Below are positions 466-37,085 of a stretch of 64,000 bases of DNA, piece by piece (position 1 is the stretch's first letter; each line of letters opens with the position of its first letter). The notes beneath the pieces were generated by a model. That model was not told the DNA's origin. It ran no database searches and was given only the letters and a program-made list of their open reading frames with translations. Both the position numbers and the translations under genes were made by a program. The stretch lies in IMG/VR virus record IMGVR_UViG_3300014720_000001, positions 62,001 to 126,000 of that record; one strand, given 5' to 3'.

Positions 466-1839
466 TTACAGCAACTCACGAGCTTTTTGCTGCGCTTCGA
501 GATTACTCTTTATGCTCTCGGCGCGGATCTTTTCCATTTCAATCAGCTGCTTGATATCAAAATCGGCGAGTTGGCCGGCTTCTAACCGTTTTCGCAACAG
601 CGCCTGCATCGCGGCGCCCGAGCCGGTGAAGTTCGGCGCAATTTCGGCGATCTGGTTGTATGCGGAAGCTACCTCGTGCGGGTCGTAGCCGGAGATAACC
701 GGGTCGTTCAGAATAAGATCGTTCAGCACGCCACGCGATTTGATTTGCTGTAGTTTGTTTTCGTGCTCCGCGTCGGACATGCGCATAAACGCTTTTTGTT
801 TTTGCTTAGTCGGGTCATTGGCCTTGCCAGCTTCCGTGTCCATTTCTCCGGCTAGACCCGCTGGGCTCATCAGTTTGCCGAGATGGCCCATCGTACCGCT
901 ATAGGATGTCAGGGGCGGGGCCGAGTCTTGTTTTTTTTTAACCGCCGCCACCTTTAAAGCTAGCGGCGCGGTTTTGGGGTCGTGAAGGATTGAGCCGGTT
1001 ACGGGTGTCGGAGCCGCTTTCTTTTCGTCTGCCGGCGCCGCGAATGCCGCAAGCTTATTCTGTGCGTCGTTATGCAGTTCTACCGCTTTGATAACGTTCT
1101 CTACCAACGTCACAACGGGCAGATTACCGAAGTAATCCTGCTTTGTGGTGGCCTGTTTTGTGAAGTGCGGGTAAACCGCTGCAATTTTATTAAGGGTTGA
1201 CGCGCCCATGTCGCCGAGCCGTAAACCAACTTCGCGCACAGCGTCGTTAAACGACATGTGACCCGGAACGCGGAAATACTGGGCCAGCTCTTCCATTGCG
1301 CTTGCCGCTTTGTGGTGCGCAACCGTAGCCTGCCGGCGCGTCTCTTCCATAGCCTGCTTGGCGGCTTGTTTCTGGCTGTATGTACGCATGACCGCTGAGT
1401 GCTCATCGCGGGGCGGCGGGGTGTACGTCTTTTCTGGTAATACACTCTTGGCGGCGGCCGCTTTGTTTAATGCGGCGTTGCGGCGGGATATAAACCCAGT
1501 TGGCGACACCGCGTACTCGGTTGATATAACGCTGTTTTGCGTTAGCTCGGCCGACGTCTTTACATGTTTTGGATACAACGCGTTCATAACAACGTCTGCA
1601 TCTGCCAGCTGAAAGTCGGCAGCTTTCTCAAGCGTCGTCTCGCCTAGCTCGCGCTGCTTATTGGTGCGGCCAGTGTTATAGGCGTGCACCATAAGATTGA
1701 TGTGCCCGGCCGGGATATTGGCGTCCGACGCGCTTTTGATAATTGCAGCGTTAGGTGTCTCGCCGCCGTTAACCAACGTCGCAGCGCGCTCGATGGCGCT
1801 TAACAGCTTTTGCTCAGCTTTTTTACTTAGTGCCCGCAT
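466..1839 (-). CDS. Hypothetical Ala/Lys-rich protein, probable virion protein
   Basis: 457-aa ORF tightly packed with its neighbours; several K-x-A motifs; no recognisable catalytic motif. Confidence 0.7.
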   Translation of the reverse strand: MRALSKKAEQKLLSAIERAATLVNGGETPNAAIIKSASDANIPAGHINLMVHAYNTGRTNKQRELGETTLEKAADFQLADADVVMNALYPKHVKTSAELTQNSVISTEYAVSPTGFISRRNAALNKAAAAKSVLPEKTYTPPPRDEHSAVMRTYSQKQAAKQAMEETRRQATVAHHKAASAMEELAQYFRVPGHMSFNDAVREVGLRLGDMGASTLNKIAAVYPHFTKQATTKQDYFGNLPVVTLVENVIKAVELHNDAQNKLAAFAAPADEKKAAPTPVTGSILHDPKTAPLALKVAAVKKKQDSAPPLTSYSGTMGHLGKLMSPAGLAGEMDTEAGKANDPTKQKQKAFMRMSDAEHENKLQQIKSRGVLNDLILNDPVISGYDPHEVASAYNQIAEIAPNFTGSGAAMQALLRKRLEAGQLADFDIKQLIEMEKIRAESIKSNLEAQQKARELL

Positions 1840-3162: not shown

Positions 3163-5580
3163 TTATGCGTTAGCGATAGCGCCAAGATCAACGTCCTGCG
3201 CGGCTTCTTCCGGATACGGCTCGATGGTCTTCTGCTTGAGGAACAGAATAACGTCGCCAAGCATTTCAAACGCGTTGCGCAGCGAGTCTTCCAGTTCCGG
3301 CATGTCCGACTTGCCGTAACGTTCAGCAAACCGGTCACCGTGCCAGTAGAACATAAACAAGATACGACCAAGCTTGTCGAGACCCTTGGTTAGCTCGCCC
3401 ATGTAACGATCAACGAGCGAGTCGTCGCGCACAGCGCGGAGCATGGCGCCCACCATGGCGGTATCAAACACTTCACGCTGCCCGCTCTGAGCGGCGTCAA
3501 TGACAGAGCGTACGTCGCGCTGATCGAGCAGCGTGTTCGGGTTGTATACGCTGCGGTCGGTTTGACTGGCGCTCATACCCGGGACAGGCACGCCAACGTC
3601 GATACCGAGCTGCGTCGGAACGCTGGTACCCATGATGCTCTCACCGCCCATCACCGGGCCGGGATCGCTTGGGGCAGACGGCGCGCCATTAATCATCATC
3701 GGACCGCCGTACGGGTCGGCATACTTCACGCGGCATTGAAACTTGCGTTTGGCGGCAGCTTGTTTCAGGATCTCGCGGGCTGCTTCTTCGCGCAGGCCGT
3801 GATGCTCAACAAGTGTTACAAGCGCTTTGATAGGCGTTAGCGCTGATTCTTTGTTAAGTGTTGGGTTGATGGACACGGTTGTTCCGGTGTGATAAACCGT
3901 CAACGACGCGGTCTTCTGCATTAGTGCTAGTTGTGCGTCGACAAGGTTGCCGGGCATCAGGGCCGGCGGATCGCTCTCGCCGCAACCACACGCGCCCTGA
4001 TCTTCTGCAGTTTCGGCGTCGTCTTCGCCCTTGGTGACCTTGAGCAGCTTGAACCCTTCCGGCACGTAGATGTCACCCATACTCGCGCGCAGGCTGGAGC
4101 CCTTCTTACCGTTGAGGTGGATACGCACGCCATCGCGGTATTTGTCGTAGTTCAGTGGGTCCGTGTAGCAGCAGGCGCCGATAGAGCCCTTGGGCGGATA
4201 CTTCGAGTGATCTTCGAGGTGCACTTCGTAAATCGTGCTGTCTTCGCTGTTACCGTACTCCTTGATCACGCGGAAAGGCGCTGTGGTGTCGCCGCGCTTG
4301 CTGAGGGCGATATAACGGGCGTCCTTGCTCGGTACGCTGTTGGCGTCCGGCAGGCCGTCAAACCACTTGTCAAACTCTTCCCCCTCGATCCGGGCCAACG
4401 CAAAAACTTGGTCGGCGCGGGTGTTGAGCCAGTTACGCGCACCGTCGACGCGCACGACCGTGATGAAGTTCTCGCGCTTGGCGGCGCCTTGCGGATGGAC
4501 AGCCACGTAACAACGCTCAATGTTGCCCGGCTTGACCAGAATCTCGTACAGGCCGCTTTCGGTCGGGTTGAACAGCTTCTTTTCAACCTGAATGTGGTAC
4601 GGCACCGAAACGTTATCGCGGTCACGCTCGTCTTGAATTAACACGCCGTCGCGCAGAAGCTTTTCCTGATCTTCTTCGCTGTGGCCGACCGGCGCCTTGG
4701 TCTGAATCGTGACGTCATACGTGATAACCGTCAGGCCCTTAACAGACGCCGGTTCCTTGGGCGCTTCGGACAGCACACTAGCAATCTTGGTGCTGGCGGC
4801 AACTTCGCGAGCCGCGGCTTCGGCGATGGCTTGCTTCACGATATCTAAACCGTGAAACTCGTCGAGAGCGGCGGCGAGCTGTGGGGCGTGTTTGCACGTG
4901 TTAATAAGCGTGCCGATCACTTCGCGCCCAGCCTGCTTTAAAAACGTCTGCAGATCCAGCGCTTCGCCCATCTCTTTGAACGCCTGCGCAGTATTTAACG
5001 TGGCGCTCTTGGCGAGGGCCGGCATAGCAGCCGTCATCATCTCTTTGAGCGTCGGCTGAGCTGAGCCGAACTTGGCCGGGCTGCGCGAAAGCTGTGTAAA
5101 GTCGGGCTGGCGCTGGCCTAAGCCCGACAGGTTGCGCTGCACGCCGCTGCCCAGAATGTTGGGCTTGCGGTTAATCAAGTAGTTAATCCAGTTTTCCTTG
5201 AGCGGCACGAACATGTCCTGATTCTTGATGTACAGGAGTTCGTGGCCCTTGAGGTCGCCGTTCAGGAAAAACACCGGCGCATACAGCCAGTTTGAACCGA
5301 CCTTAAACGCAAACACGCCGACCGCTTTGGTGTTTTCCCGGTTGCGGTCGAGGAGCTGGAAGCCGATTTCGTGGTCGAGCAGCTTGGGAGCCGAATCGCG
5401 CAGATAGGCGTGCGCCAGATTGCTAAACGACTGCTCGAAGGAAGTGTCGTCGCCTTTGCCGCCTAGATCGGCGTATTTGGTCTGAGTGCGGTCATACGAC
5501 TTCAGCACATTCAGCCAATGCTTAACAGACGACTCTTTCGCTTTTTTGTTATACACGGCCAGCCTCCATGCTGCGCTCAA
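3163..5580 (-). CDS. Large hypothetical protein, probable virion protein with many K-x-A motifs
   Basis: 805-aa ORF with TKYA, AKSA, LKQA, TKIA, QKTA, KESA and VKYA motifs. Confidence 0.75.
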   Translation of the reverse strand: MSAAWRLAVYNKKAKESSVKHWLNVLKSYDRTQTKYADLGGKGDDTSFEQSFSNLAHAYLRDSAPKLLDHEIGFQLLDRNRENTKAVGVFAFKVGSNWLYAPVFFLNGDLKGHELLYIKNQDMFVPLKENWINYLINRKPNILGSGVQRNLSGLGQRQPDFTQLSRSPAKFGSAQPTLKEMMTAAMPALAKSATLNTAQAFKEMGEALDLQTFLKQAGREVIGTLINTCKHAPQLAAALDEFHGLDIVKQAIAEAAAREVAASTKIASVLSEAPKEPASVKGLTVITYDVTIQTKAPVGHSEEDQEKLLRDGVLIQDERDRDNVSVPYHIQVEKKLFNPTESGLYEILVKPGNIERCYVAVHPQGAAKRENFITVVRVDGARNWLNTRADQVFALARIEGEEFDKWFDGLPDANSVPSKDARYIALSKRGDTTAPFRVIKEYGNSEDSTIYEVHLEDHSKYPPKGSIGACCYTDPLNYDKYRDGVRIHLNGKKGSSLRASMGDIYVPEGFKLLKVTKGEDDAETAEDQGACGCGESDPPALMPGNLVDAQLALMQKTASLTVYHTGTTVSINPTLNKESALTPIKALVTLVEHHGLREEAAREILKQAAAKRKFQCRVKYADPYGGPMMINGAPSAPSDPGPVMGGESIMGTSVPTQLGIDVGVPVPGMSASQTDRSVYNPNTLLDQRDVRSVIDAAQSGQREVFDTAMVGAMLRAVRDDSLVDRYMGELTKGLDKLGRILFMFYWHGDRFAERYGKSDMPELEDSLRNAFEMLGDVILFLKQKTIEPYPEEAAQDVDLGAIANA

Positions 5581-5637: not shown

Positions 5638-7518
5638 TCACGGCTTCCACCCGCTTGTTGTGCCGATGACGCCAAACTGCTCGCCCTGCGCTAATGCCGG
5701 CACATAACTACTGCCAGCTGTATCGCTACTTAAGCCGCGCTGGACGCTATTCATCAGCCCTTTTTCCTGATAGGACCCCAACATTCGAGTCATCCAGTCG
5801 GGGTCGTTTGAAATGTTTGCCATACCCCGTACCATCTCCGGCTGAAACGGTGGCGGCTCTTTATGCGCCTGTACTGTTTTCACGCCGTATTTATTCAAGT
5901 TACTGAGCACGTTTTTACCGATCTTCGTGCCAATTGAGTAGTGCAGTACGGGTTTTTCTAGATAATGTCCGGAAAGCGAGCTAGGTGCGGCAGCTACACT
6001 TCCCTCGCGCGGAGTCCAGTTGCGCTCGATTGCGGAGTACGGCACAACGTCGTCAGGCACGTAATCGCCGTACTCGTCCGTCAGGCGCACGTGATTTACA
6101 AGTCCGCGCGCCAGTAGCTCGATGTTGCGCCGATGGGCTGTAATTCCGCTGTTACCCATTACCTGCCGCATGGCTTGCACAAAGTAGCGCCGGCCTTCGC
6201 CGATTCCTTTGTGCCTGACAATTTCTGAAGGATTTGGCATACCGTCTGATAGAACGTCGCCAGCTTCCAGCTCGTCGCCTTTTTTAATAGAAAGCGCGCG
6301 CTCGGTCGGGACGTAGTGGTCTTGTCCGTTAATTTGGACATAGTGCCCGCCTTGGGGAGCCGGGCGAATTTCTTGTACGCGGCCGTCGATTTGAGCGTGC
6401 GCGGCCCCGTCTGGATATTTTTTTGGCACCTGCACGAGCGCGTTGAGAGCTTTAAACCCCGAAATCGCCCCCGCGCCGCCGACACCGCCCGAGTGTTTCG
6501 AGCTGATCTGGCTTTGCGTGACGGGCTCGGACAGGGCTTGCGCCGCTGCGATGCCCACATAATCGCCAACAGGCGGTAAACGCCCTTTCTCTCGATAGCC
6601 GACGTCTCTTGCATAAACTCCGCCGTCTCCGGGACCGCCTACAATTGGGCTACGAACTAAAATATCTTTAGCGCCACTTTCTTTCAGGTCGCGCAGAATT
6701 TTGGGCGTTAATATCGTGTTTCGCTTGTACGGCCCCACCGCGCGCGCCAGTAACGCGCCTTCATTGTCGGGGTCATCTACGTCGGTCGGGTAGCCGCGTT
6801 CTTCTGCGGCCATACGGCGCTCTTCGTCGGTGTCGTCGTCATCGTCGGCTGTGACCAACAAACGGTGCGTCATCTGCGCCAACTGCTTGCCGTAGAAACC
6901 AGCGTCGGCCGTCGCGGTCTTCAGGTCGATCACGCCTTTACGGGTACCGAACGCGCCGGCAAAGTACTCCACCGGGCGTAAACCTTGGCTGTAACCGCGC
7001 AACACCGGAATTGGAATCGGTTCGCCGCGGTGATCTAGGTACTGCATGTCGGCGCCGAGAATTGAATTCAACTGAAACTTGTTGCCGACGCCAGACCCGG
7101 CGATTTGATGGACGAGGGGGTTATCCTGCCCTTCCGCTTCTTTGTAGACCTTGTCGAGAAGTTCTTGCTGGGCTGTTTGAGCAAGTTCAAGCAGTTTGAC
7201 GTTGCGTTGCTTTTCGTCGAGCCGTCTGTCGGCAAAAATGTCGCGCATCTGGTTTTGTACGCGCAACTGAACGTGCCGAGCCGCCAGCGTCGGTTTGATA
7301 TCTTTAAGCCCGAACGACAGGCCGTTAGTCGTGTACCCAGCATCACGGCCAATATCGTGCAACCGCTTCATAACCTCGCGATACTTTTCCGGGTGGGTTT
7401 TCGCCAGCTCGGTTGCGAGGCCCGACATTGTCTTCTTAGTTAAAACGCGGTCATAGTCGCGCATTTCTGGCGGCAGTGCTTCGTTTACCAGAAGTTGACC
7501 GAGCGTCGTTTTGAGCAT
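5638..7518 (-). CDS. rpoC: DNA-directed RNA polymerase beta' subunit, C-terminal half
   Basis: Begins TTLGQ (cf. E. coli TTVGR). Bridge helix GLRPVEYFAGAFGTRKGVIDLKTATADAGFYGKQL; trigger-loop region AAAQALSEPVTQSQISSKHSGG; RRNIELLARGL-like C-terminal motif. Confidence 0.92.
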   Translation of the reverse strand: MLKTTLGQLLVNEALPPEMRDYDRVLTKKTMSGLATELAKTHPEKYREVMKRLHDIGRDAGYTTNGLSFGLKDIKPTLAARHVQLRVQNQMRDIFADRRLDEKQRNVKLLELAQTAQQELLDKVYKEAEGQDNPLVHQIAGSGVGNKFQLNSILGADMQYLDHRGEPIPIPVLRGYSQGLRPVEYFAGAFGTRKGVIDLKTATADAGFYGKQLAQMTHRLLVTADDDDDTDEERRMAAEERGYPTDVDDPDNEGALLARAVGPYKRNTILTPKILRDLKESGAKDILVRSPIVGGPGDGGVYARDVGYREKGRLPPVGDYVGIAAAQALSEPVTQSQISSKHSGGVGGAGAISGFKALNALVQVPKKYPDGAAHAQIDGRVQEIRPAPQGGHYVQINGQDHYVPTERALSIKKGDELEAGDVLSDGMPNPSEIVRHKGIGEGRRYFVQAMRQVMGNSGITAHRRNIELLARGLVNHVRLTDEYGDYVPDDVVPYSAIERNWTPREGSVAAAPSSLSGHYLEKPVLHYSIGTKIGKNVLSNLNKYGVKTVQAHKEPPPFQPEMVRGMANISNDPDWMTRMLGSYQEKGLMNSVQRGLSSDTAGSSYVPALAQGEQFGVIGTTSGWKP

Positions 7519-7519
7519 G

Positions 7520-7759
7520 TCACGGCGTCCACACTATGTTCTGCATCGACTTAGGTTGAAAGTCAGAGACAACTACTGTCTTTTCGATGCCGAGCGCACG
7601 CAACATAGGGTGAAAGTCTTTTTCACCTACAGTTGAATACACGATGGCTTCGTCAACCTGAATGGCCACAAAAAGCGGGTTGCCTTTGTCGTCTTCAACA
7701 ACAACGCTGTGCGCTTTTTGATCTGTCGGCTGCAGGCTGTGCTGCGTTTTAACCCGCAT
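7520..7759 (-). CDS. Small hypothetical protein between the RNAP genes
   Basis: 79 aa from MRVKTQH (ATG at 7757-7759); its stop lies 1 nt from the rpoC-C start. Confidence 0.6.
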   Translation of the reverse strand: MRVKTQHSLQPTDQKAHSVVVEDDKGNPLFVAIQVDEAIVYSTVGEKDFHPMLRALGIEKTVVVSDFQPKSMQNIVWTP

Positions 7760-8480
7760 TGTCCGCAATACTCCGAAGCATGGCTGCGATCGCGTTCGCC
7801 TTGATCTGCGTTGCTGTCGGAGCGTTTGGGTCTTGATAGCTGGGCCCAAACGGACGCCCGATCGACGCGGCCGCCTTCTCGGAACGGTCCCACCACGCGG
7901 CTGCCTTCGACGGGTCGGCTTCGGGCGGGGCGGCGTTCGGGGGCATGGGTCCGCCCGGAGGCGTCGGACCGCCCGGAGGTTGCATGCCGCCCTGCGCGTT
8001 CGGGTCTTGCGGCGGCGGCGCCATCGGGCCGCCCGGAAGCGCGGTTTCAGCCGGCGGGGCGCCAGTTGTGCCCGGCGGCAGCACCAGCGACTCGGGCGGC
8101 ACCTGAACGCCCATCGCATTCATAATGGCCGTGAGCTGCTGCTGCATGTTGTACAGCCGGTAGTCAAGCATCTGCATCATCTGCTCGGGCTTGAGCTTTT
8201 GCTGCGCGCCGGCAGGAGCTGCGCCCGGAGCGGCGGGTGCGGCGGGCGCTGCGGGAGGTGCAGCGGGAGGCGCCATTCCCATAGCCGCTGGATCCACTGG
8301 CGGTGCAGCTGCTGCAGCGACAGCAGACGGATCGGCCGGCGGTACAGCCCCCATGGCGGCTGGGTCAACCGGCGGAGCACCACCAGCAGCAGCGGGATCC
8401 ACCGCCGCTCCGGGCACTAATGCAGATTTTTCAAAGCGCGCTTTCGCGAGCGCGATAAGTTCGGGGTTGACCGTGAACAT
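7749..8480 (-). CDS. Pro/Ala-rich low-complexity protein
   Basis: 243-aa ORF with PPVDPAAMG repeats and an EKSA motif near the N-terminus; SD-like GGAGG upstream. Confidence 0.75.
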   Translation of the reverse strand: MFTVNPELIALAKARFEKSALVPGAAVDPAAAGGAPPVDPAAMGAVPPADPSAVAAAAAPPVDPAAMGMAPPAAPPAAPAAPAAPGAAPAGAQQKLKPEQMMQMLDYRLYNMQQQLTAIMNAMGVQVPPESLVLPPGTTGAPPAETALPGGPMAPPPQDPNAQGGMQPPGGPTPPGGPMPPNAAPPEADPSKAAAWWDRSEKAAASIGRPFGPSYQDPNAPTATQIKANAIAAMLRSIADNAG

Positions 8481-8500
8481 ACGACCTCCGTAGGTAAGAA

Positions 8501-11500
8501 TTACTTATTATCTTCCACAATATGCACCGGGGTGTCTACTTCAATTTCGCCGCGCCGGTACGCCTGCACGGCATCCTGCTTGCTACGAAACACCCGCGGT
8601 TTAGACTTTTTGTTAATCCGGCTCGACGCCAAGTATAGCCCGGTTTGGTAATCCTTGTTCGGCACGTAGTGCGCCCGGAACGTCGAGGCGGCAAACAAGT
8701 TCTTGCTCGGCAGCATCTTTTCGACGGCTTCTTGCGCGGCGTCGTCCGTGCTTGGCACGTGGTACTGCATGGCGTCGCCGTCGAAGTCGGCACCAAACCC
8801 CTTGGTGATTACGGGGTTTACTTCCATGACTTTGTTCTTAGTTAACTTGGGGTAGAACGCCATCATGCCGTAACGATGGAGTACCGGCGCGCGGTTAATC
8901 ACAATTGGGCGCGACGACATCTGCTTGTTTAACTCAGCCGCGGCTTCTTTGTTCTTGTCTTCTACCGCCTGCATAGCCTGCATGCGGGGAAGACCGCGGC
9001 GGACCAACCCGCGGACAACGAACGGTTTGTAAATATCCCACGCTTTCTCTTCCGGCAGCGCGACTTCGTCCATGTCCAAATCGGGATTCGGCGTGATCAC
9101 CGCGCGGCCGACGAGATCTACCGTCGAGCTGAGCAGCTTGCGCTGAACTGTGCCGTACTTGGGAGAGTTCCCAAACACGTGCCGCAAGAAACCCTTGACG
9201 TTGCGCTCGACGTTTTTGGGTTGTTGCGGTTCACCTAAGCCAGTCACCGCCTTCATCGAGTCGTACACACTCAGCCGCTCGTCGCCGTAATCTGCCAGCG
9301 CGCCCGATGCGTCTTTAAGCGTGTCGTTGGCGTCGAGCAATTCTTTGTACAAATAGTTTGCGTCAGCAACGAGCGGAAGCTTTTTGTTACCCATCGTGCT
9401 GACCGGGCGGAACATGGGTGGCAGGACCGGGACTTTACTAATCATCCAGTCCTTGGGGTGCACACCGGTTGTTTCGGCGCTCTTTAAAAAACCAAGCCGA
9501 CGCACTGCAGCATCGCGCAGGGTTTTACGCCCTGATTTAATATCTTCGCGCGCCTGCTCAATGGCTTTTGGTAAGTTAATGCGTTCCAGCGCGGCTTTGA
9601 TCGCCGTCGGTCCGGTTTTGTCGCCCAGCTGTTCACGCCCGGCCAGTATGCCTCGAAACTGCTTCTCCGTTAGGCCCAGCACGCGGCGGATCGGGTCTTC
9701 CATAACGGGGTTGGGCAGCGGCTCGTGCAGCGTGATCTTGCTCCACCGGTTACCGCCGTGACCACCTGTTAATGTTTCATCAAACAACCCACCAGCAATA
9801 GGTTTGAGGCGGCCCTTCCAGTCAACAGTTTCAGAACTCTTTAACTCGCGTGCGCCAGCCAGTTCATCGACGTCCTTGTCCGTCATGGCCATCAGATTTG
9901 AACGCGTACCTTTGCGCACAACGTTAATCCCAGACGCGCGAAGTTGATTTACAAACTTCTCGTAGACGTGCGGCACCTTGGGCAGCGGCGGTGTATACCC
10001 AGCCATGAACTGCGACCAGTATTCGGGATTGGCCTGCCCGCGCACCATTTTGGCGTCACGAATAACTTTGCCGGCCCCGTGCGACAGTAGCGCGCCGAGA
10101 TCGAGCATGCCGACGCGCTTAGCGCCCTCGCTGCCGCCCTTGGCCGGCGTGCCTTCAGCGGTATACGCGCCCATCGAGCGACCCTGCGCCTTCGACTCGC
10201 TGGTGTGGTGCAGTTTCATGAAAAACCGGCTGCCCGTCAGGACGCCGCCGATTTTGCGGCCGGTCTCTGGGTCGATAACGTCTTCGGTATCTGATAGCCC
10301 GTGCTTGGCCAGCTCTTTCTGCGCAAACTCAATCAAGTCGTTTTTGTTATCAAAGTCCTTGAGCTTGTACGGCGAACCGGTTTTCATCGCCACTTTACCC
10401 AGCGCAGCTTCGATCACCTGCGCGGGGTTAATGCGGCTGATTAGACCCAGCGGCGAGACAAGCACTTCAAACGGATTGCCGTCGCGGTCCTTGGGCATCT
10501 GGTCGTCCGGGACGATCTCTGCCACGACGCCCTTGTCGCCGAAACGCCCGGTGAGCTTATCGCCGACGTCCATGGGCGCTTGGTTTTTAACAACGACGCT
10601 CACGCCCTTTTTGGTGTGCATGACATCGGTTACAACCCCGGGCGCATGATGATCCCACGTGATCGTTTCGTTAGTGAAGCTGCCGGCACGCCCGCGATGC
10701 ACCTTGCCGTATACCGTGTCTTTTTTCTTTGCCACAAGCACGAGTGGATCGCCAAATTTAACCTCGGTACCTTTTTTAATCGCACCGTCGTCGTCAAACT
10801 TGTCGAGGTACTTTTTGTCGTACTCGGTCGGGAACAAACTCACGAACGCCTTCTTGCCAACGTGAGTGTTGTCGTCCCACTCGGCTTCGTGCTGATACAT
10901 GTGCTCAGACGTCAGCCGTTTGGATGCAGATTCAGAAATCACTACGGCGTCTTCGTAGTTTTTGCCGCGAAAAGGCAGATAAGCCGTGCGCAAGTTAAGT
11001 CCAAGAGCCGCGCTACCGTTTTGATCGGTAAAATTTGAGCGGGCTAACAACTGCCCCGGATTCACTACGTCGCCCGGTTTTACAAGCGGCGTCTGATGTA
11101 AGAACGTCTTACGGTTGTACGGCATCTCGTTGTACAGATCGATCGTCTTTTTGTTGCCGTCTTTGTCGCGCAGCACGATACCGTCCGGCGTAACATCAAC
11201 AACTTGCGCCCGCTCGGTGGCCCGCGTGGCGCCTAATTTCTCGCCCATTTCGTCTTCGTGCGACATGCTCTCGTCGTCAGCTTTGGCGGACTGCAGCAGC
11301 GGCGCCTCAGCGTTTACGAGCGGAAGCGCCTGCGTAAACATTCGACTACCCATGATCACGCGATGACCTTTGATCATGGACTTGATCGGCACCATGTTGG
11401 ACAGCGTCGAGAACGTTGTGTCCATGTTTGGCAGGCTGAACTGCGCTTCTTTTCGCGGCACGTACTTGAGCTTGCCGTTTACAAGCGCGGCTACGACAGG

Positions 11501-12919
11501 TAACCCGTTGTCTTCTTCGCCCGGAAACACGAGCGGGGTATCAGATAACTCTTGCGGCGTCTTGTACACCTTCTCGCCGGTTTTCATATCTACAACAGGC
11601 GTATAGACCTTGCCGTCCGCGCCTTTCATAGCGCCGCGGGCAAACCGCATGTCGACGCCCACTTTTCCAGACTCGGGCGTGCGGAGGTAGTCGATAAAGC
11701 CGAGATGGCTGGGTTGCACAGAACGCGACTCAGCGGGCACGGCGTCGAGCGAGCCGATGCCGCCCTCGCCCATGCGCGTTACGCGGGTCTGGTGGTCAAA
11801 GATCTCGGCCGGGTTGATCTCTTCTAAGCTCGACCCCAGCCCGCTGCCGATCAACGCCGCAGAAATAGCTTTGTCGAATACGCCGGACGGAATGTGGTCA
11901 ATCGACTTTTTAGCCGTGGCTTTCCAGAGCAGTTTATTTAGTGCTTGCCGATCTTTAGTAAACCGCTCAGCAATAAGGTCTTCCGGGCCGACAACTGACT
12001 GGTACACCATGTTGTCGCGGTCGTCGCTATCGGCCTCGCGGCGATTCACTGCGATTAATTTCTTAGTGATCGCCAGAATCGTCTCCGGCGTCATGTTCTT
12101 GTATTCAGACCCAAGCGTGCGGCGGGTAACTTCGGGGTCAAGTTCAGTCTTGGCAAACTCCGCGGCAATAGCCTGCGCTTTCGCAATCGGATCAGCGCCG
12201 GCAACCTGTTTATTCACCAGCCGGGCATAGATCTTGTCCATCGTGCCCGCGTCGCCCTTCTCCATGTTGACCGCGGTGATCTCGTTGCCCCACGCCGAGC
12301 GGATGTCCTGATCTGACACGCCCATCGACTTGAGCAGCGGCATGAGCGGAATCTGCGCCTGCCCAATGCTAATCTTGAACACGCCGGTTTTGGGGTCGAG
12401 GAAGTACCGATGCGAACGGCCTTTGCCCGGCAGCGTGTTTACGTGCGCTTCAATCTCGCCGTTGTCTTTCTCGCGGGTAAAAACGCCGGGGCGCAACCGC
12501 ATCTGGTGCGCAAGTGTGTACTCCACGCCCCCGTTTACGAACGTGCCGGAGTCGGTGAGATAGGGCACGTGCGCAATCGTGGCGCGCCGCTGGCCGACGG
12601 GCTGGCCGGTTTTGTTATCTGTAAGCGTCCACGTACCCTGCAGCCGCCGGGCAAGTGTCCCGCGGGAAAGGACAGCTTTCTTCTGATCTGCCCTTGTGAA
12701 ACGTTCGGGCCCCGTGTACCCGACGTCTTGAAGTTGCAGCGTATACAGGTCGTTCTGCAGCGGTTTAAGACCTTGCGCGCTGGTGAGCGCTTGGTTGAAG
12801 ATGTTGTCGCGCATCACACCAACGTCGCCGAACGAACGCATCGTCGGCGCAGCTGACTGCGCAGCTGACTGCGCAGACAACGACGGCGTCGTTTTAAGCG
12901 GTGGCAACTCGGGGGTCAT
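8501..12919 (-). CDS. rpoB: RNA polymerase beta subunit fused to the N-terminal half of beta'
   Basis: Beta motifs VPYLTDSGTFVNGGVEY, GDKLTGRFGDKGVV, KLHHTSESKAQGRS, GMLDLGALLSHGA. After about 9920 come beta' motifs GLFDETLTG, LLSSTVDLVGRAVI, NRAPVLHR and the catalytic GADFDGD (8774-8794). Confidence 0.93.
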   Translation of the reverse strand: MTPELPPLKTTPSLSAQSAAQSAAPTMRSFGDVGVMRDNIFNQALTSAQGLKPLQNDLYTLQLQDVGYTGPERFTRADQKKAVLSRGTLARRLQGTWTLTDNKTGQPVGQRRATIAHVPYLTDSGTFVNGGVEYTLAHQMRLRPGVFTREKDNGEIEAHVNTLPGKGRSHRYFLDPKTGVFKISIGQAQIPLMPLLKSMGVSDQDIRSAWGNEITAVNMEKGDAGTMDKIYARLVNKQVAGADPIAKAQAIAAEFAKTELDPEVTRRTLGSEYKNMTPETILAITKKLIAVNRREADSDDRDNMVYQSVVGPEDLIAERFTKDRQALNKLLWKATAKKSIDHIPSGVFDKAISAALIGSGLGSSLEEINPAEIFDHQTRVTRMGEGGIGSLDAVPAESRSVQPSHLGFIDYLRTPESGKVGVDMRFARGAMKGADGKVYTPVVDMKTGEKVYKTPQELSDTPLVFPGEEDNGLPVVAALVNGKLKYVPRKEAQFSLPNMDTTFSTLSNMVPIKSMIKGHRVIMGSRMFTQALPLVNAEAPLLQSAKADDESMSHEDEMGEKLGATRATERAQVVDVTPDGIVLRDKDGNKKTIDLYNEMPYNRKTFLHQTPLVKPGDVVNPGQLLARSNFTDQNGSAALGLNLRTAYLPFRGKNYEDAVVISESASKRLTSEHMYQHEAEWDDNTHVGKKAFVSLFPTEYDKKYLDKFDDDGAIKKGTEVKFGDPLVLVAKKKDTVYGKVHRGRAGSFTNETITWDHHAPGVVTDVMHTKKGVSVVVKNQAPMDVGDKLTGRFGDKGVVAEIVPDDQMPKDRDGNPFEVLVSPLGLISRINPAQVIEAALGKVAMKTGSPYKLKDFDNKNDLIEFAQKELAKHGLSDTEDVIDPETGRKIGGVLTGSRFFMKLHHTSESKAQGRSMGAYTAEGTPAKGGSEGAKRVGMLDLGALLSHGAGKVIRDAKMVRGQANPEYWSQFMAGYTPPLPKVPHVYEKFVNQLRASGINVVRKGTRSNLMAMTDKDVDELAGARELKSSETVDWKGRLKPIAGGLFDETLTGGHGGNRWSKITLHEPLPNPVMEDPIRRVLGLTEKQFRGILAGREQLGDKTGPTAIKAALERINLPKAIEQAREDIKSGRKTLRDAAVRRLGFLKSAETTGVHPKDWMISKVPVLPPMFRPVSTMGNKKLPLVADANYLYKELLDANDTLKDASGALADYGDERLSVYDSMKAVTGLGEPQQPKNVERNVKGFLRHVFGNSPKYGTVQRKLLSSTVDLVGRAVITPNPDLDMDEVALPEEKAWDIYKPFVVRGLVRRGLPRMQAMQAVEDKNKEAAAELNKQMSSRPIVINRAPVLHRYGMMAFYPKLTKNKVMEVNPVITKGFGADFDGDAMQYHVPSTDDAAQEAVEKMLPSKNLFAASTFRAHYVPNKDYQTGLYLASSRINKKSKPRVFRSKQDAVQAYRRGEIEVDTPVHIVEDNK

Positions 12920-12922
12920 GGC

Positions 12923-13777
12923 TCACCCCGCTTGCGACTGCTCGGCCTGCTGCTTCAACGCAATGATCTCGTCTGGGTCGACGTATGTCGGCAGAATGCC
13001 AGCGATACGCGCCTTGGATTTCGCAGCTTCTTCCACCGCTTTGGCGCGTGAACGATCGCGGGCGCGGTCGTACATCAGCTTGGCCGCCAACCCGCCCAGC
13101 CCAAGGCCCGCGCCGACGTATGCGCCGCCAACTGTTGCCGGAACACGCTTGGCTACGTCATACGCGTCAGTCAACCACTCAAACAGCGCTTTCTTCTCCG
13201 ACGCCGCTTTTTCGCTTGCGGCGTCATATGCGCTGTCTAACTTTTTACCCCCGCCACCAGTGAGCGCGTCGTAGTATTCTTTTTCAGCCGCGGAAATCTG
13301 ATCTTGCTGCTCACGCCGCTTTTTTCGCTTGTGCAATGCCTCGATAAGTTTGTACCCGCCAATACCGCCGAGCGCTCCAGCGCCCCACGTAGCCCCCGTA
13401 CCGAAAGACGACCGAATGATGTTTGGATCAAACGAGTTGGGCTGCTTCGGCGCAACGTCGGGCGTAAACGGGCGTAAAAAGCTGAGCACGGAATCCGGCA
13501 GCATCTTGCCGACACCCTCGGTTACGCTGTCGTAAATACCGGCGATTTTGGTTTCTGTAATCTTGGGCGTCTCTTCTTCCTCTTCCTCGCGGGGCTTGTT
13601 TAGCGCCTGAGACAATCCGCGGGCCAAATAATACAGGCTAGCAGCAGTAGCGCCAGCACCGAGCCCGCCGATACCAGTGCGCACAATACGATCGCCCCAG
13701 AAACGCTGGTAATCTTGGGGGGTAGGTTTGCCAACAGCGGCAGCGACTGGGACGGCATTGTTTGAGAGTTTTTCCAT
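12923..13777 (-). CDS. Glycine-zipper membrane protein with K-x-A motifs
   Basis: 284 aa; three Gly-rich hydrophobic segments; TKIA, EKAA and EKKA motifs. Confidence 0.75.
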   Translation of the reverse strand: MEKLSNNAVPVAAAVGKPTPQDYQRFWGDRIVRTGIGGLGAGATAASLYYLARGLSQALNKPREEEEEETPKITETKIAGIYDSVTEGVGKMLPDSVLSFLRPFTPDVAPKQPNSFDPNIIRSSFGTGATWGAGALGGIGGYKLIEALHKRKKRREQQDQISAAEKEYYDALTGGGGKKLDSAYDAASEKAASEKKALFEWLTDAYDVAKRVPATVGGAYVGAGLGLGGLAAKLMYDRARDRSRAKAVEEAAKSKARIAGILPTYVDPDEIIALKQQAEQSQAG

Positions 13778-13789
13778 GAGTAAGGCTCA

Positions 13790-14137
13790 CTAATGCTTGG
13801 GCGGAATCATGCCGTAAACCTGTGCCCACTCCAACCAGACGCGAAAGTGTTTGTGCTCGTCGTCCCAGTTGTCAGTGCGCTTTAACAGCCGATACCAACC
13901 GTTCACCATCTTATCATTTATGTTGTCAAATTCTGCTTTTTGCGCCGGATCCCACAGCTCGAACATTCGAGATTTGAAATCATACTGTAAATCGATATTT
14001 TCCAGCTCATCTTGCTTCAGGTCGGGGCGGTGACCCGCGCCGATTACTGGAAAGCCGTCGAGCGTGCCGGGCCAGTTCAACTGGGCGTTATTGTGCTGCG
14101 TGCCACCAATTTCGCCGTGATACTTGCGAAGGCTCAC
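13790..14137 (-). CDS. Hypothetical protein
   Basis: 115-aa ORF in the operon. Confidence 0.6.
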   Translation of the reverse strand: MSLRKYHGEIGGTQHNNAQLNWPGTLDGFPVIGAGHRPDLKQDELENIDLQYDFKSRMFELWDPAQKAEFDNINDKMVNGWYRLLKRTDNWDDEHKHFRVWLEWAQVYGMIPPKH

Positions 14138-34798: not shown

Positions 34799-34901
34799 GC
34801 GATCACCCGTGGCTTGAATAGAGTTTTGAATCTTGCGTGTGGCGACGTGTTGCACGATTTTCTCGAACAGCTTGCGCCGAGATAACGCCAACGCCATCAG
34901 T

Positions 34902-37085
34902 TTATTTGGCGGAATCGGCGGCATCGTCGTCGTCCAGAATGCTCTTGCTGGCTTGGGGTTTGGCGTCTGGATATTTTAACAGCCGGCGCTTCTTTTTTGA
35001 AAGCGGGCGTTTCGGGGTGTCCGGCGTGAGTTTAAGCGACTGAAATACCGCGCTTTCTTTCTCTTGACTGTCGTCTTGTAGTAACAATTTGCGTCGGCGT
35101 TTGAGATACTTTTGTAACTCTTGCTCCTGATACGCTTCGAGCATAGTTTTAACGCGATCAGACCTAGCCGGTGCGACTAACTTAGTGGGATCAATCGCCC
35201 AGTGTTGCAGCGCCCAGCCGCGTCTTGGCGTGGGATTGGTCATGAACGGCCCGCCATGGCGCGCCTTGAAGCTCGCCCAGCGCTTAATTTGCCGCGCATC
35301 TTCGTCGGGGATCCGGCGGCCTGAGTTATAGTTCTGGTACCACTCCAGCCAGCCCTTCGGATCATGCTCGGTGACCCATTCCGGCTTCCACTCTCCCAGA
35401 CTGGCTAAGCGCGGGCCTTCTTTCTCATACAGCGACTTGTACACACCCATGCGATGCAGCTGGCCGGGTGTAAAGTCAGGCTGAAAAGCGGGCAGCTCGG
35501 CGCCCTGCTTCTCTTGTTCTTTCTGCTTGCGGTACTTGTCGCCCTCTTCTTTCAAGATCTTGCGGAAGATCTCGTTGAGCTGTTCTTTCTCGGCGGTGAG
35601 GTGTTCGAGCACTTCGTCGCCGGTGCGCTCGCGCTTGTAGCCCATGAGCTTGCCCACCATGCTCGGGGCTTGGCTGGCGCTTAGATATCTTTGCACTTGG
35701 ACGTTCTTGAGTTCTTCTGGCAGATCACGGTGCGAGTCAAAACGTAAGCCGCGGCCACGAGCTTGCTGGCTGCGTGACTCGTGCCAGTGCGGGTCTAAGA
35801 GCTGGATAAGACTCGTGCCCTTGGTAGACAAGCCCTCGGCGCCAGCAGGGCCAATGAGTAACGCCCGGAGCTTGCCTTGGTTGTATGCGTCCACAGCGGC
35901 TTGGCGCGCCTTTGAGCTAACGCCGCCATGGAAAAACGCATGCGGGATCTTGGCTTTCTCTAGGCCCGCAGCATAAGGGGCCAAGCCAGAGTCAATGAAA
36001 TTGGAGTAGATAATAGCTTTCTTGCGCTTGTCTTCGCCCAGCGTCTTCTGCAAGTTCTGAAAGGCTGTCTGAAGCTTGGCGCTCTGCTGAAACGCTTTGG
36101 CCGGGTCTTTGTCGGCACGAAACGGCTGCGTGGATAAGCTCACTTGGCGCAGACCAGTTAAGAAGCTATTTAACTTCGCCAGCTCGTCTTTAGATAGCGG
36201 AAACTCTTGGTCCAGCTTCCAGAGAAACCCGGGCGGAATCTTGGTACGAATAGCTTTTTGAATCTTGTCTTGCGCAGGAGACAGGGGCACGCGCACGACT
36301 TCTTCTTTGACGTCCACTCCTTCGGGCGTCTTGCTGGGCTGGTAATCCACTTTGCCCTGTAGAAGCTGGCGCAGTTCCTTCTCGTTCTTGACGACTGGCT
36401 TCACACCCGGCTTCACGCCCCGCAGCCAGCCAAACAAACCCGGTTTAACAGTCTTGTAGTCGATGTAGCGCTTTTCGAACTCTTCCGGCGTGATCGATTT
36501 GTTGTGCAGCATGGACAGCAAATTCGCCAGATCCGTGGGCGAATTCGTGATCGGCGAACCAGTAAGTAACATTAAACGGTTCGCTTGGGCAGCAGCTTCG
36601 GCAGCTCCGGCAGAACTGGCGCTCCCCGGATTGCGTAATCTATGCGCCTCGTCCATAATCAGCGTCTTGGGCGGCTTCTGGAACTTCTTGCCCAGCGCCA
36701 ATCCCGTGTAGCTCATGATCTCAGGATTAGAGTTACGCGTGAACTTCTTGATCTCTTTGTCGAAGTTGCCACGTAAACTGGCCGGGACCACCACGCCGTA
36801 CTCTTCGCCGTCCTGCTCTTTGGCGGCTTCTGCAGCAGCCAATGAAGACAGCGATTTGCCGGACCCTAGGCCGTGATAGACAAGTAATCTGGGATCGGGG
36901 CCCGCGATCCTGTCGGCAATGCGTTGCTGGTGCTCTTGCAGTTGAATATCGGGCAGAAGTTCGGCTTGTTTACTGCTGCCAAATTGGCGCTCAGAATTTC
37001 CGGCTGCCAATTCGGCCACTTTAGTCCAGACGCTCTCGGGCAGCGCGGACTTGTGGGGCGCAGAATCGTCGAGAATGCTGTTCAT
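34902..37085 (-). CDS. SNF2-like superfamily 2 helicase with an added C-terminal module
   Basis: HGLGSGKS, IMDEAH, LLTGSPITN, GAEGLSTKG, QARGRGLR; second module GWLEWY..Y..GRR..DEDARQIKRW. Confidence 0.85.
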   Translation of the reverse strand: MNSILDDSAPHKSALPESVWTKVAELAAGNSERQFGSSKQAELLPDIQLQEHQQRIADRIAGPDPRLLVYHGLGSGKSLSSLAAAEAAKEQDGEEYGVVVPASLRGNFDKEIKKFTRNSNPEIMSYTGLALGKKFQKPPKTLIMDEAHRLRNPGSASSAGAAEAAAQANRLMLLTGSPITNSPTDLANLLSMLHNKSITPEEFEKRYIDYKTVKPGLFGWLRGVKPGVKPVVKNEKELRQLLQGKVDYQPSKTPEGVDVKEEVVRVPLSPAQDKIQKAIRTKIPPGFLWKLDQEFPLSKDELAKLNSFLTGLRQVSLSTQPFRADKDPAKAFQQSAKLQTAFQNLQKTLGEDKRKKAIIYSNFIDSGLAPYAAGLEKAKIPHAFFHGGVSSKARQAAVDAYNQGKLRALLIGPAGAEGLSTKGTSLIQLLDPHWHESRSQQARGRGLRFDSHRDLPEELKNVQVQRYLSASQAPSMVGKLMGYKRERTGDEVLEHLTAEKEQLNEIFRKILKEEGDKYRKQKEQEKQGAELPAFQPDFTPGQLHRMGVYKSLYEKEGPRLASLGEWKPEWVTEHDPKGWLEWYQNYNSGRRIPDEDARQIKRWASFKARHGGPFMTNPTPRRGWALQHWAIDPTKLVAPARSDRVKTMLEAYQEQELQKYLKRRRKLLLQDDSQEKESAVFQSLKLTPDTPKRPLSKKKRRLLKYPDAKPQASKSILDDDDAADSAK

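What the first reader, a model, noticed from the sequence alone, without database searches (positions are those of the whole stretch)
5638..9900. Both beta' zinc-binding sites appear lost and the trigger loop is altered
Seen by comparison with E. coli RpoC recalled from memory. The N-terminal zinc ribbon between GLFC..IFG and MGHIEL is deleted (here GLFDETLTGGHGGNRWSKITL). The second site has no cysteines: LVTADDDDD for VVTEDDCG, and VRSPIVGGPGDGGVYARDVG for VRSVVSCDTDFGVCAHCYG. The trigger loop keeps His but reads SQISSKH for LTMRTFH. Inference: a zinc-independent, streamlined RNAP with possibly different promoter contacts, termination behaviour and inhibitor sensitivity.
Basis: partly seen in the sequence, partly recalled or inferred. 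Interest (0 to 1): 0.6.

Follow-up and report, generated by a model that had tools for sequence, protein, structure and literature searches.

The report
Cysteine-free, zinc-site-less phage RNA polymerase
A 205-kb freshwater jumbo phage encodes its own bacterial-type RNA polymerase that has lost both zinc-binding sites and contains no cysteine in 2,098 residues, so it probably works without zinc, a metal thought to be part of every multisubunit RNA polymerase.

Summary
All three sequence observations are confirmed. The beta' N-terminal zinc ribbon is replaced by five residues (GHGGN). The four Cys of the second site are D/G/Y/D. The trigger loop reads I-S-S-K-H where E. coli has M-R-T-F-H.

The enzyme is not a cellular polymerase. 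The window is part of a complete 204.6-kb phage genome with terminal repeats, found in lake-water metagenomes. The polymerase is made of two minus-strand ORFs. One is a fusion of beta with the N-half of beta' (1472 aa). The other is the C-half of beta' (626 aa). Two small conserved genes lie between them.

It is the genome's only RNAP. No alpha or omega homologue was found, but a sigma70-like gene is present.

Both polypeptides contain zero cysteines. So do the sigma-like protein and an SNF2 ATPase. About 50 relatives (49-95% identity) share the Cys-free state under strong purifying selection (dN/dS 0.03-0.05). The zinc ribbon is missing across the whole family. The second site was lost once: outgroups (Salmonella phage Arash, Vibrio phage D69, locus L075) keep its four Cys.

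In Arash the homologous polymerase is the most-detected virion protein. The likeliest reading is a virion-packaged, zinc-independent polymerase. I rate it a new variant of a known kind.

The parts
8501..12919 (-). Fused RNAP beta + beta' N-half, 1472 aa, 0 Cys. Beta is about aa 50-1000. The beta/beta' junction is at about aa 998-1034 (window 9818-9928). The beta' N-half runs to aa 1472.
   Evidence: Pfam Rpb2_6 (170 bits), Rpb2_3, Rpb1_1 and Rpb1_2. PHROGs phrog_24349 plus phrog_25354. NCBIfam rpoB and rpoC models. PDB beta' chains at E 3e-49. 0 Cys. dN/dS 0.03-0.05.
9728..9790 (-). Scar of the deleted zinc ribbon (Zn1, E. coli beta' about 64-100): GLFDETLTG-GHGGN-RWSKITL.
   Evidence: Alignments. 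All 51 phage sequences in that alignment have gaps at the columns of C70/C72/C85/C88.
8768..8794 (-). Catalytic Mg-binding motif GADFDGDAM (E. coli NADFDGDQM).
   Evidence: coordinates.
10529..10564 (-). Beta active-site motif GDKLTGRFGDKG (E. coli GDKMAGRHGNKG, K1065/K1073).
   Evidence: coordinates.
7749..8480 (-). Conserved 243-aa Pro/Ala-rich protein between the two RNAP genes, with a GGAGG Shine-Dalgarno sequence. 0 Cys. Function unknown; candidate accessory protein.
   Evidence: tblastn finds it in 70 related loci, always between the RNAP genes. dN/dS 0.03. No Pfam or PHROG hit.
7520..7759 (-). Conserved protein of about 79 aa. Its start overlaps the end of the previous ORF by 11 nt. Its stop lies 1 nt before the beta' C-half ATG.
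   Evidence: Conserved in 55 related loci. dN/dS 0.07. Junction sequence read. No Pfam hit.
5638..7518 (-). RNAP beta' C-half, 626 aa, 0 Cys. It starts at about E. coli beta' residue 569. It holds the bridge helix, the former Zn2 region, a trigger loop without an insertion, and a family-specific C-terminus.
   Evidence: Pfam Rpb1_5. NCBIfam rpoC_TIGR positions 548-1048. PDB beta' chains at E 1.5e-36. 0 Cys. dN/dS 0.03-0.05.
6820..6861 (-). Former first ligand of Zn2: LLVTADDDDDTDEE. D227 stands in place of C814.
   Evidence: The column is variable among relatives (D/E/S/A/G/R).
6598..6657 (-). Former Zn2 cluster: VRSPIVGGPGDGGVYARDVG. G295, Y302 and D305 stand in place of C888, C895 and C898.
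   Evidence: The clade motif is VRSP..GGP.DGG[VIL][YF].[KRN]D[VL]G.
6475..6531 (-). Trigger loop SEPVTQSQISSKHSGGVGG (I338, S339, K341, H342).
   Evidence: Q, H and GG are invariant across 53 sequences; K at the F935 position occurs in 52 of 53.
34902..37085 (-). SNF2-family ATPase, 727 aa, 0 Cys. Homologue of Arash gp217, which is abundant in Arash virions. Likely RNAP-associated.
   Evidence: Pfam SNF2-rel_dom plus Helicase_C. tblastn Arash gp217 E 1e-65. Arash virion MS.
3163..5580 (-). 805-aa ORF directly downstream of the beta' C-half. Weak homologue of Arash gp218 and Vibrio D69_0266, which sit just after the RNAP genes in those phages.
   Evidence: tblastn (E 2.5e-4 to 1.5e-6).

Best explanation
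This is the single, phage-encoded, bacterial-type multisubunit RNA polymerase of a 204.6-kb freshwater jumbo phage.

It is built from two polypeptides: a beta/beta'-N-half fusion and a separate beta' C-half. The catalytic apparatus is intact. This covers the DFDGD motif, the beta lysine motif, the bridge helix and a trigger loop with its His.

Both structural zinc sites of beta' are gone and every cysteine has been removed, so the enzyme folds and works without zinc. The zinc ribbon is a dispensable regulatory docking module in E. coli. It was deleted in the ancestor of the whole phage family. The second site is an assembly or folding clamp in E. coli. It was replaced once, in the ancestor of this freshwater clade, by a Cys-less motif with an aromatic Y/F, an invariant Asp and a Lys/Arg (inferred to fill the former metal cavity).

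The beta/beta' fusion probably substitutes for the missing alpha2/omega assembly platform (inferred). Promoter recognition is most likely by the phage's own sigma70-like protein (inferred, weakly supported).

By homology with Salmonella phage Arash, the polymerase, the sigma-like factor and an SNF2 ATPase are probably packaged in the virion and delivered with the DNA to start transcription. The purge of cysteine and zinc would then make enzymes that survive outside a cell and need no cofactor on arrival (inferred).
For: Shown directly:
- Phage origin and genome completeness.
- Only one Rpb2_6 and one Rpb1_2 locus in the genome. No hits to the alpha or omega Pfam models.
- Fusion and split architecture, conserved in 70 IMG/VR loci and in phages Arash and D69.
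- Zn1 deletion and Zn2 substitutions.
- 0 Cys in 1472 + 626 aa. Other ORFs of at least 200 aa in this genome average 1.3% Cys, giving P about 1e-12 for zero.
- Relatives have 0-2 Cys unless they carry inteins.
- dN/dS is 0.03-0.05.
- Catalytic motifs are kept.

Polarity of the losses: Arash gp216, D69 and L075 keep exactly the four Zn2 Cys but lack the zinc ribbon.

Sigma-like gene: Pfam Sigma70_r3 scores 38 bits against a cut-off of 25.3, and it is a homologue of Arash gp10.

Virion link:
- In Arash virion MS, gp206 gave 3516 spectra (the top protein), gp216 1210, gp217 1148 and gp10 467 (PMC10585845).
- The RNAP genes lie next to homologues of Arash structural genes gp218, gp222, the major capsid protein, gp233 and gp236, in the same order as in Arash.
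- The sigma-like protein (280 aa) and the SNF2 ATPase (727 aa) are also Cys-free. The major capsid protein, the portal and other structural homologues in this phage have 0.7-2% Cys.

Complex prediction: sigma-like protein with beta' N-half residues 1060-1472 gave weak support, score 0.59 against a best control of 0.00.
- The mark was reached by 51 of 78 solved complexes and 2 of 108 mismatched pairs.
- At 0.60 or under, only 5 of the 78 solved complexes passed, as did all 4 mismatches that passed.
- The runs agree in at least 31% of contacts, and partner pLDDT is at least 62.
- Sigma-core complexes are solved, so this pass may only reflect likeness.

From the literature: an E. coli RNAP lacking the zinc ribbon can be purified (PMC8501970). 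The ribbon's known roles are regulatory (PMC9378689 and PMC8501970).
Against: - There is no metal analysis, structure or activity assay for any member of the clade.
- Virion packaging is shown only for Arash (about 24-33% identity), and that MS list of 116 proteins includes probable contaminants.
- In this phage the portal gene is far from the RNAP genes.
- The AlphaFold2 model of the beta' C-half alone was poor (mean pLDDT 58; the Zn2 and trigger-loop regions were below 50), so the local fold without zinc is not shown.
- The sigma-like factor could serve the host polymerase instead.
- The link between virion packaging and low cysteine is weak outside this family: the phiKZ virion RNAP has 16 Cys in 2614 aa against 33 in 2850 aa for the non-virion enzyme.
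- The background Cys frequency comes from a crude ORF call.
Confidence: 0.7

Rival explanations
1. The enzyme is an intracellular (non-virion) phage polymerase for middle or late genes. Loss of the zinc sites and of cysteine is compensated drift with no link to packaging.
For: No proteomics exists for this clade. The portal gene is distant from the RNAP genes. AR9's non-virion RNAP also lacks the zinc ribbon. Vibrio phage 1.031.O beta' lacks the Zn2 Cys but keeps the ribbon, so such losses recur in phage enzymes.
Against: It is the only RNAP in the genome. Its Arash homologue is the most-detected virion protein. Zero Cys in 3,105 aa across the polymerase, the sigma-like protein and the SNF2 ATPase, held over about 50% sequence divergence, is hard to explain by drift.
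Confidence: 0.2
2. Zinc, or another metal, is still bound through non-Cys ligands (His/Asp/Glu) at or near the old sites.
For: A His is conserved within the clade in the GHGGN linker. D305 is invariant, D226 is invariant and H218 lies nearby.
Against: The linker offers one His and is GPEGQ in Arash. At the second site one former ligand is an invariant Gly. One is Tyr or Phe. One column varies among D/E/S/A/G/R. That leaves at most one conserved carboxylate among the four former ligand positions.
Confidence: 0.06
3. The gene pair is a decaying or inactive relic.
For: Loss of features held to be universal in these enzymes. R933 of the trigger loop is replaced.
Against: dN/dS is 0.03-0.05. The catalytic motifs are intact. 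The genes are conserved in 70 loci. Inteins sit in its conserved motifs in relatives. The Arash homologue is abundantly expressed.
Confidence: 0.02
4. It is a streamlined cellular (bacterial) polymerase.
For: About 30% identity to bacterial beta and beta', far closer than phiKZ-type enzymes.
Against: The record is a complete 204.6-kb virus genome with direct terminal repeats. It has terminase, portal and capsid homologues. The only similar genes in named phages are in Arash and Vibrio phages D69, D148 and D181.
Confidence: 0.01

Closest known systems
RNA polymerase of Salmonella phage Arash (gp206 + gp216; PMC10585845) and of Vibrio phages D69, D148 and D181
   Same: Same architecture: a beta/beta'-N-half fusion of about 1525 aa plus a separate beta' C-half of about 606 aa. 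The zinc ribbon is deleted. The trigger loop ends in K-H. The enzyme is almost Cys-free. A sigma70-like gene and an SNF2-type helicase gene accompany it, and the RNAP genes sit beside the structural genes.
   Different: Only 24-33% identical. Arash and D69 keep all four Cys of the second zinc site, and the window clade has none. The genes between the two RNAP genes differ. Arash is annotated but not biochemically studied.
phiKZ and AR9 jumbo-phage multisubunit RNAPs (PMC7598289, PMC7618050, PMC9209446)
   Same: Phage-encoded beta/beta' homologues without alpha or omega. Beta' is split after the catalytic double-psi barrel. A helicase gene follows the beta' C-half gene (phiKZ gp74-gp75). AR9 nvRNAP also lacks the zinc ribbon. 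A virion-packaged form exists.
   Different: In those phages beta is also split and is never fused to beta'. Two enzyme sets are encoded. No sigma homologue is present; gp68 or gp226 takes that role. Similarity to bacterial RNAP is far lower. phiKZ nvRNAP keeps the zinc ribbon. The phiKZ subunits contain Cys.
Bacterial RNAP core (E. coli/Salmonella RpoB and RpoC; best PDB matches are beta' chains 8i23_D, 6wvj_D and 5tw1_D)
   Same: About 30% identity across the catalytic core: DFDGD, beta GDK..KG, bridge helix, trigger-loop His, and a continuous alignment through the clamp-helix and flap regions.
   Different: No Zn1, no Zn2 and no Cys. No SI3. No alpha or omega homologue detected in the genome. 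Beta is fused to beta' and beta' is split. The C-terminus is family-specific.
Natural beta-beta' fusions (the beta/beta' fusion models NCBIfam NF007172 and NF011417; Helicobacter and Wolbachia from my own knowledge) and split beta' of cyanobacteria and plastids (rpoC1/rpoC2)
   Same: The fusion joins the beta C-terminus to the beta' N-terminus, as in those bacteria. Beta' is encoded in two pieces, as in cyanobacteria.
   Different: Here both changes occur at once. The split lies at about E. coli residue 560-570, roughly 60 residues before the end of cyanobacterial gamma. The bacterial examples keep the zinc sites (from my own knowledge, not tested here).
Unsplit phage beta' of Rhizobium phage RHph_Y65 and Vibrio phage 1.031.O
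   Same: Phage-encoded, bacterial-like beta'. 1.031.O independently lacks the Zn2 cysteines.
   Different: RHph_Y65 keeps both sites and 1.031.O keeps the zinc ribbon. Both are Cys-containing (16 and 23 Cys) and neither is fused or split.

Membership tests
Multisubunit (double-psi beta-barrel) RNAP, bacterial beta/beta' type | Beta' catalytic DxDxD (NADFDGD) and the beta lysine motif | tested here: met
   GADFDGDAM and GDKLTGRFGDKG. Pfam Rpb1_2 and Rpb2_6 score above their cut-offs.
Multisubunit (double-psi beta-barrel) RNAP, bacterial beta/beta' type | Bridge helix and trigger loop with the catalytic His | tested here: met
   GTRKGVIDLKTATADAGFYGKQL is the bridge helix. The trigger loop keeps Q929, H936 and GG. 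M932 is I and R933 is S.
Multisubunit (double-psi beta-barrel) RNAP, bacterial beta/beta' type | [quoted passage not shown] | tested here: not met
   Replaced by GHGGN; gaps in all 51 phage sequences of the alignment.
Multisubunit (double-psi beta-barrel) RNAP, bacterial beta/beta' type | Second beta' zinc site (C814/C888/C895/C898) | tested here: not met
   D/G/Y/D at those positions; 0 Cys in the protein.
Multisubunit (double-psi beta-barrel) RNAP, bacterial beta/beta' type | Alpha2 and omega assembly subunits | tested here: not met
   No hit to PF01000, PF01193 or PF01192 in the complete genome, although all 14 control genomes were hit. Highly divergent analogues cannot be excluded.
phiKZ/AR9-type jumbo-phage RNAP | Beta split into two or more polypeptides; two paralogous sets (virion and non-virion) | tested here: not met
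   Beta is one piece and is fused to the beta' N-half. There is a single set in the genome.
phiKZ/AR9-type jumbo-phage RNAP | No sigma homologue; a gp68/gp226-type fifth subunit | tested here: not met
   A sigma70-like gene is present. A gp68-like protein was not searched for.
Arash-type phage RNAP (no formal family; PHROGs phrog_24349 + phrog_25354) | Beta/beta'-N-half fusion plus a separate beta' C-half, with the zinc ribbon deleted | tested here: met
Arash-type phage RNAP (no formal family; PHROGs phrog_24349 + phrog_25354) | Presence in virions | not testable with these tools
   Shown by MS only for Arash. For this phage it is inferred from homology, shared gene order and the Cys-free pattern.
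Sigma70 family (280-aa protein, genome 35826-36668, outside the window) | Regions 2, 3 and 4 | tested here: inconclusive
   Region 3 scores 38.3 bits, above the 25.3 cut-off. The region 4 helix-turn-helix scores 17-18 bits, below its cut-off. Region 2 is seen only in the Arash homologue, at 17.5 bits. NCBIfam RpoD_Cterm covers aa 115-267 at E 2e-7.

The most novel reading that the evidence does not exclude
Removing every cysteine, and with it both zinc sites, is an adaptation of a transcription kit that is ejected from the virion. The kit would be the polymerase, the sigma-like factor and the SNF2 ATPase (3,105 aa, 0 Cys). These proteins are stored in oxic lake water and must pass the tail and refold in the host. 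They would therefore be built to need no thiol chemistry and no metal cofactor. The family would record the steps: the zinc ribbon lost first, then the last four cysteines (the Zn2 ligands still present in Arash, D69 and L075) replaced by an aromatic/Asp/Lys motif. If so, Cys-free status could be used to predict which phage proteins are ejected. The enzyme would also be a natural zinc-free, label-ready minimal multisubunit RNAP.
Probability: 0.3. Interest if true: 0.75.

Novelty: new variant of a known kind. Interest (0 to 1): 0.62.

Why it matters
RNA polymerase is a textbook example of an essential zinc enzyme (PMC11112998). The beta' zinc ribbon is described as common to all multisubunit RNAPs (PMC7618050).

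A naturally zinc-site-less and cysteine-free enzyme kept under strong selection in a widespread lake-phage clade shows that neither site is needed for the core mechanism. It also shows one way evolution replaced the second site.

The family as a whole is a phage RNAP type not covered by the reviews of jumbo-phage RNAPs read here:
- bacterial-like;
- beta fused to the beta' N-half;
- a single enzyme set;
- accompanied by a sigma70-like factor;
- probably packaged in the virion.

In practical terms, a two-polypeptide, Cys-free RNAP would be convenient for site-specific labelling, for oxidative or metal-free conditions, and for structural work on minimal RNAP assembly without alpha and omega.

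Tried and rejected
- AlphaFold2 of the beta' C-half with a 27-sequence alignment. Mean pLDDT was 58 and pTM 0.49. The bridge-helix, Zn2 and trigger-loop segments scored below 50. It says nothing about the local fold, so no fold search was run on it.
- Complex prediction for the sigma-like protein with the beta' N-half gave only weak support. It is reported with its controls and not relied on.
- PHROG and Pfam scans of about 25 neighbouring ORFs were almost all blank. The virion context therefore rests on homology to Arash.
- Gene order around the portal is not shared with Arash.
- The test of whether virion RNAPs in general avoid cysteine, done on phiKZ, gave only a two-fold difference. phiKZ gp55 and gp178 were too divergent to align, so zinc-ribbon status in the phiKZ virion RNAP stays open.
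- The 'moraphage' lineage paper describes a different clade without an RNAP.
- Markov et al. 1999, on the role of the second site in assembly, could not be opened. Only its title, from a reference list, and my own recollection support that role.
- The PF00940 search for a T7-type RNAP was uninformative because its controls did not ring.
- Not used: read laying, the search for homologous proteins and the search of protein representatives. The claims do not rest on absence of relatives.

Full report
**What is at the coordinates**

The finding lies on the minus strand. ORF 8501-12919 (1472 aa) carries Pfam Rpb2 domains followed by Rpb1 domains. It is therefore RNAP beta fused to the N-terminal half of beta'. 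ORF 5638-7518 (626 aa) is the C-terminal half of beta': Pfam Rpb1_5, and NCBIfam rpoC_TIGR positions 548-1048.

Two tightly packed small ORFs lie between them. One is a 243-aa Pro/Ala-rich protein (7749-8480). The other is a protein of about 79 aa (7520-7759) whose stop lies 1 nt before the beta' C-half start codon.

The window is bases 62001-126000 of a complete 204,621-bp virus record with direct terminal repeats. It has terminase, portal and capsid homologues. The same locus is held by several lake-water and freshwater metagenome runs from different studies. This is a freshwater jumbo-phage enzyme, not a cellular one.

**Checking the observation**

I used Salmonella RpoC as the reference. 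It is the same length as E. coli RpoC and has Cys at 70, 72, 85, 88, 814, 888, 895 and 898.

- **Zinc ribbon.** The phage sequence GLFDETLTG-GHGGN-RWSKITL aligns with GLFCARIFG...RMGHIEL. The 37 residues that hold the zinc ribbon are replaced by five.
- **Second site.** The second site reads D227, G295, Y302 and D305 in place of the four Cys. This comes from HMMER against M. smegmatis beta' and from MAFFT.
- **Trigger loop.** It has no insertion and keeps Q929, H936 and G938-G939. It has I for M932, S for R933 and K for F935.

All three observations are confirmed. Neither polypeptide contains any cysteine. The only His in the linker is not conserved in Arash. At the second site one former ligand is an invariant Gly and another column is variable.

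**Beyond the observation: a cysteine-free enzyme under selection**

There are zero Cys in 2,098 aa. Other ORFs of at least 200 aa in this genome average 1.3% Cys (median 1.1%). That gives a probability of about 1e-12 to 1e-10 for zero by composition alone (the ORF call is crude).

A scan of IMG/VR found 70 related loci at 43-95% identity, mostly in contigs of about 180-235 kb. They have the same gene order. Their RNAP polypeptides have 0-2 Cys, with two kinds of exception: some of my ORF calls are over-extended, and some genes carry large insertions.

The insertions examined in the beta' C-half genes are inteins:
- Pfam finds Hint plus LAGLIDADG domains.
- They sit in the trigger loop and the bridge-helix region.
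- They would be spliced out of the mature protein.

The insertions in the beta part are similar in size. The one I scanned (L015) gave no Pfam hit.

dN/dS against three relatives is 0.03-0.05 for both genes, and the catalytic motifs are intact. The enzyme is functional and the Cys-free state is maintained.

**Order of the losses**

Three outgroups lack the zinc ribbon but keep all four Cys of the second site:
- Salmonella phage Arash (gp206/gp216);
- Vibrio phage D69;
- the most divergent IMG/VR relative, L075.

In Arash gp216 those four are the only cysteines in the protein. So the ribbon was lost in the family's ancestor. The second site was lost once, at the base of the freshwater clade. 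There it was replaced by VRSP..GGP.DGG[VIL][YF].[KR]D[VL]G.

I infer that the aromatic residue and an Asp-Lys/Arg pair fill the former metal cavity. This is not shown, because the AlphaFold2 model of the isolated subunit was too poor.

Other phage beta' proteins vary:
- Rhizobium phage RHph_Y65 keeps both sites.
- Vibrio phage 1.031.O keeps the ribbon but lacks the second site.
- AR9 nvRNAP lacks the ribbon, while phiKZ nvRNAP keeps it (PMC7618050).

**How it probably works**

The genome has one RNAP set. It has no detectable alpha or omega homologue. I infer that covalent fusion of beta to the beta' N-half substitutes for the alpha2 platform.

The phage encodes a 280-aa sigma70-like protein (genome 35826-36668). 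Its region 3 scores above the Pfam cut-off, it has a C-terminal helix-turn-helix, and it is a homologue of Arash gp10. Sequence aligning to the beta flap region and the beta' clamp helices is present.

A complex prediction of the sigma-like protein with beta' N-half residues 1060-1472 gave weak support: 0.59 against a best control of 0.00.
- The mark was reached by 51 of 78 solved complexes and 2 of 108 mismatched pairs.
- At 0.60 or under, only 5 of the 78 solved complexes passed, as did all 4 mismatches that passed.
- The runs agree in at least 31% of contacts, and partner pLDDT is at least 62.
- Sigma-core complexes are already solved, so the pass may only reflect likeness.

In E. coli the zinc ribbon is a docking site. 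It binds HK022 put RNA, activates RapA, and has been reported to act in termination, antitermination and upstream-DNA contacts. An RNAP lacking the ribbon can be purified (PMC9378689 and PMC8501970). Its deletion therefore fits an enzyme that does not answer to host regulators.

The second site is linked to enzyme assembly. I have this only from the title of Markov et al. 1999 and from my own recollection of its content.

**Virion link**

In Arash virion mass spectrometry (PMC10585845):
- the fused subunit gp206 was the most-detected protein (3516 spectra, 128 unique peptides);
- gp216 gave 1210 spectra;
- the adjacent helicase gp217 gave 1148;
- the sigma factor gp10 gave 467.

The authors themselves caution that abundant intracellular proteins may carry over.

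In the window phage the RNAP genes sit next to homologues of Arash structural genes gp218, gp222, the major capsid protein, gp233 and gp236, in the same order. The gp217 homologue is an SNF2-family ATPase (window 34902-37085). It and the sigma-like protein are also Cys-free. The capsid, portal and other structural homologues of this phage have 0.7-2% Cys.

The Cys-free set is therefore the transcription kit, not the virion shell. This fits proteins that are stored in particles and ejected. It remains an inference.

In phiKZ the virion RNAP has about half the Cys density of the non-virion one (16 in 2614 aa against 33 in 2850 aa). That is a weak trend only.

**Comparison and novelty**

The enzyme is about 30% identical to bacterial beta and beta'. 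That is far closer than the phiKZ/AR9 type, and it fails the defining features of that type: a split beta, two enzyme sets and no sigma homologue.

Two reviews read here divide jumbo phages into two groups (PMC7598289 and PMC13282480). One group has split RNAPs and no sigma. The other has sigma factors and no RNAP. This family has both an RNAP and a sigma-like factor.

Only the Arash isolation paper touches the family, and it annotates the genes without analysis. I found no description of a multisubunit RNAP lacking both zinc sites or lacking all cysteines. My literature search was limited to open-access text.

I rate it a new variant of a known kind.
- Zinc independence is the best reading of the sequence.
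- The cellular framing is wrong.
- The functional predictions are untested.

The rifampicin pocket is partly changed: Q513S, F514S, D516E and S531T, with L511, H526 and R529 kept.

**Limits**

There is no biochemistry, no usable structure model of the former zinc regions, no proteomics for this clade and no host assignment. The steps that would settle the matter are listed under decisive next steps.

Noticed in passing
window 7749-8480 (-) and 7520-7759 (-): Two small genes always sit between the two RNAP genes in this clade. One is a 243-aa Pro/Ala-rich protein and the other is about 79 aa. Both are under purifying selection (dN/dS 0.03 and 0.07), are tightly spaced with the RNAP genes, and have no family hit. 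They may be accessory subunits or assembly factors.
   Followed up: partly
L064:8816-10018, L063:8840-10027, L069:7634-10021 (beta' C-half); L015:4865-5977 (beta): Several relatives carry insertions of 300-800 aa in the trigger loop, the bridge-helix region and conserved beta motifs. The three scanned in beta' C-half genes are inteins with Hint plus LAGLIDADG homing-endonuclease domains. The L015 insert gave no Pfam hit. L069 appears to hold two or more. They account for the Cys counts in those ORFs.
   Followed up: partly
L051:11840-14353, L056, L077, L072:11888-12751: In some relatives the beta' C-half ORF continues for another 290-840 aa with no Pfam match. This is a C-terminal fusion of unknown function.
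   Followed up: no
window 34902-37085 (-): SNF2-family ATPase (727 aa, 0 Cys), homologous to the virion-abundant Arash gp217. In Arash, and in phiKZ (gp74-gp75), a gene annotated as a helicase directly follows the beta' C-half gene. It may be a RapA-like partner of phage RNAPs.
   Followed up: partly
genome 39618-44282 (-) = L007:9618-14282, outside the window: A 1554-aa protein with no cysteine and no family match lies near the sigma-like gene. Further Cys-free ORFs flank the RNAP genes (window 466-1839, 12923-13777, 13790-14137, 33971-34924). They are candidates for other ejected proteins.
   Followed up: no
genome 35826-36668 (-) = L007:5826-6668, outside the window: Sigma70-like protein (280 aa, 0 Cys) in a phage that also encodes its own multisubunit RNAP. 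The jumbo-phage RNAP reviews read here do not describe this combination.
   Followed up: partly
window 59258-62365 (-): 1035-aa protein with three repeated domains. It matches PHROGs annotated as virion structural protein or baseplate wedge subunit (up to 259 bits).
   Followed up: no
window 17695-18531 (-): 278-aa ORF with a weak endolysin-type N-terminal domain (PHROG E about 5e-6).
   Followed up: no
L080 (Vibrio phage 1.031.O beta', locus 5752-9543): This unsplit phage beta' keeps the zinc-ribbon cysteines but lacks those of the second site. That looks like an independent loss in a different phage RNAP lineage.
   Followed up: partly
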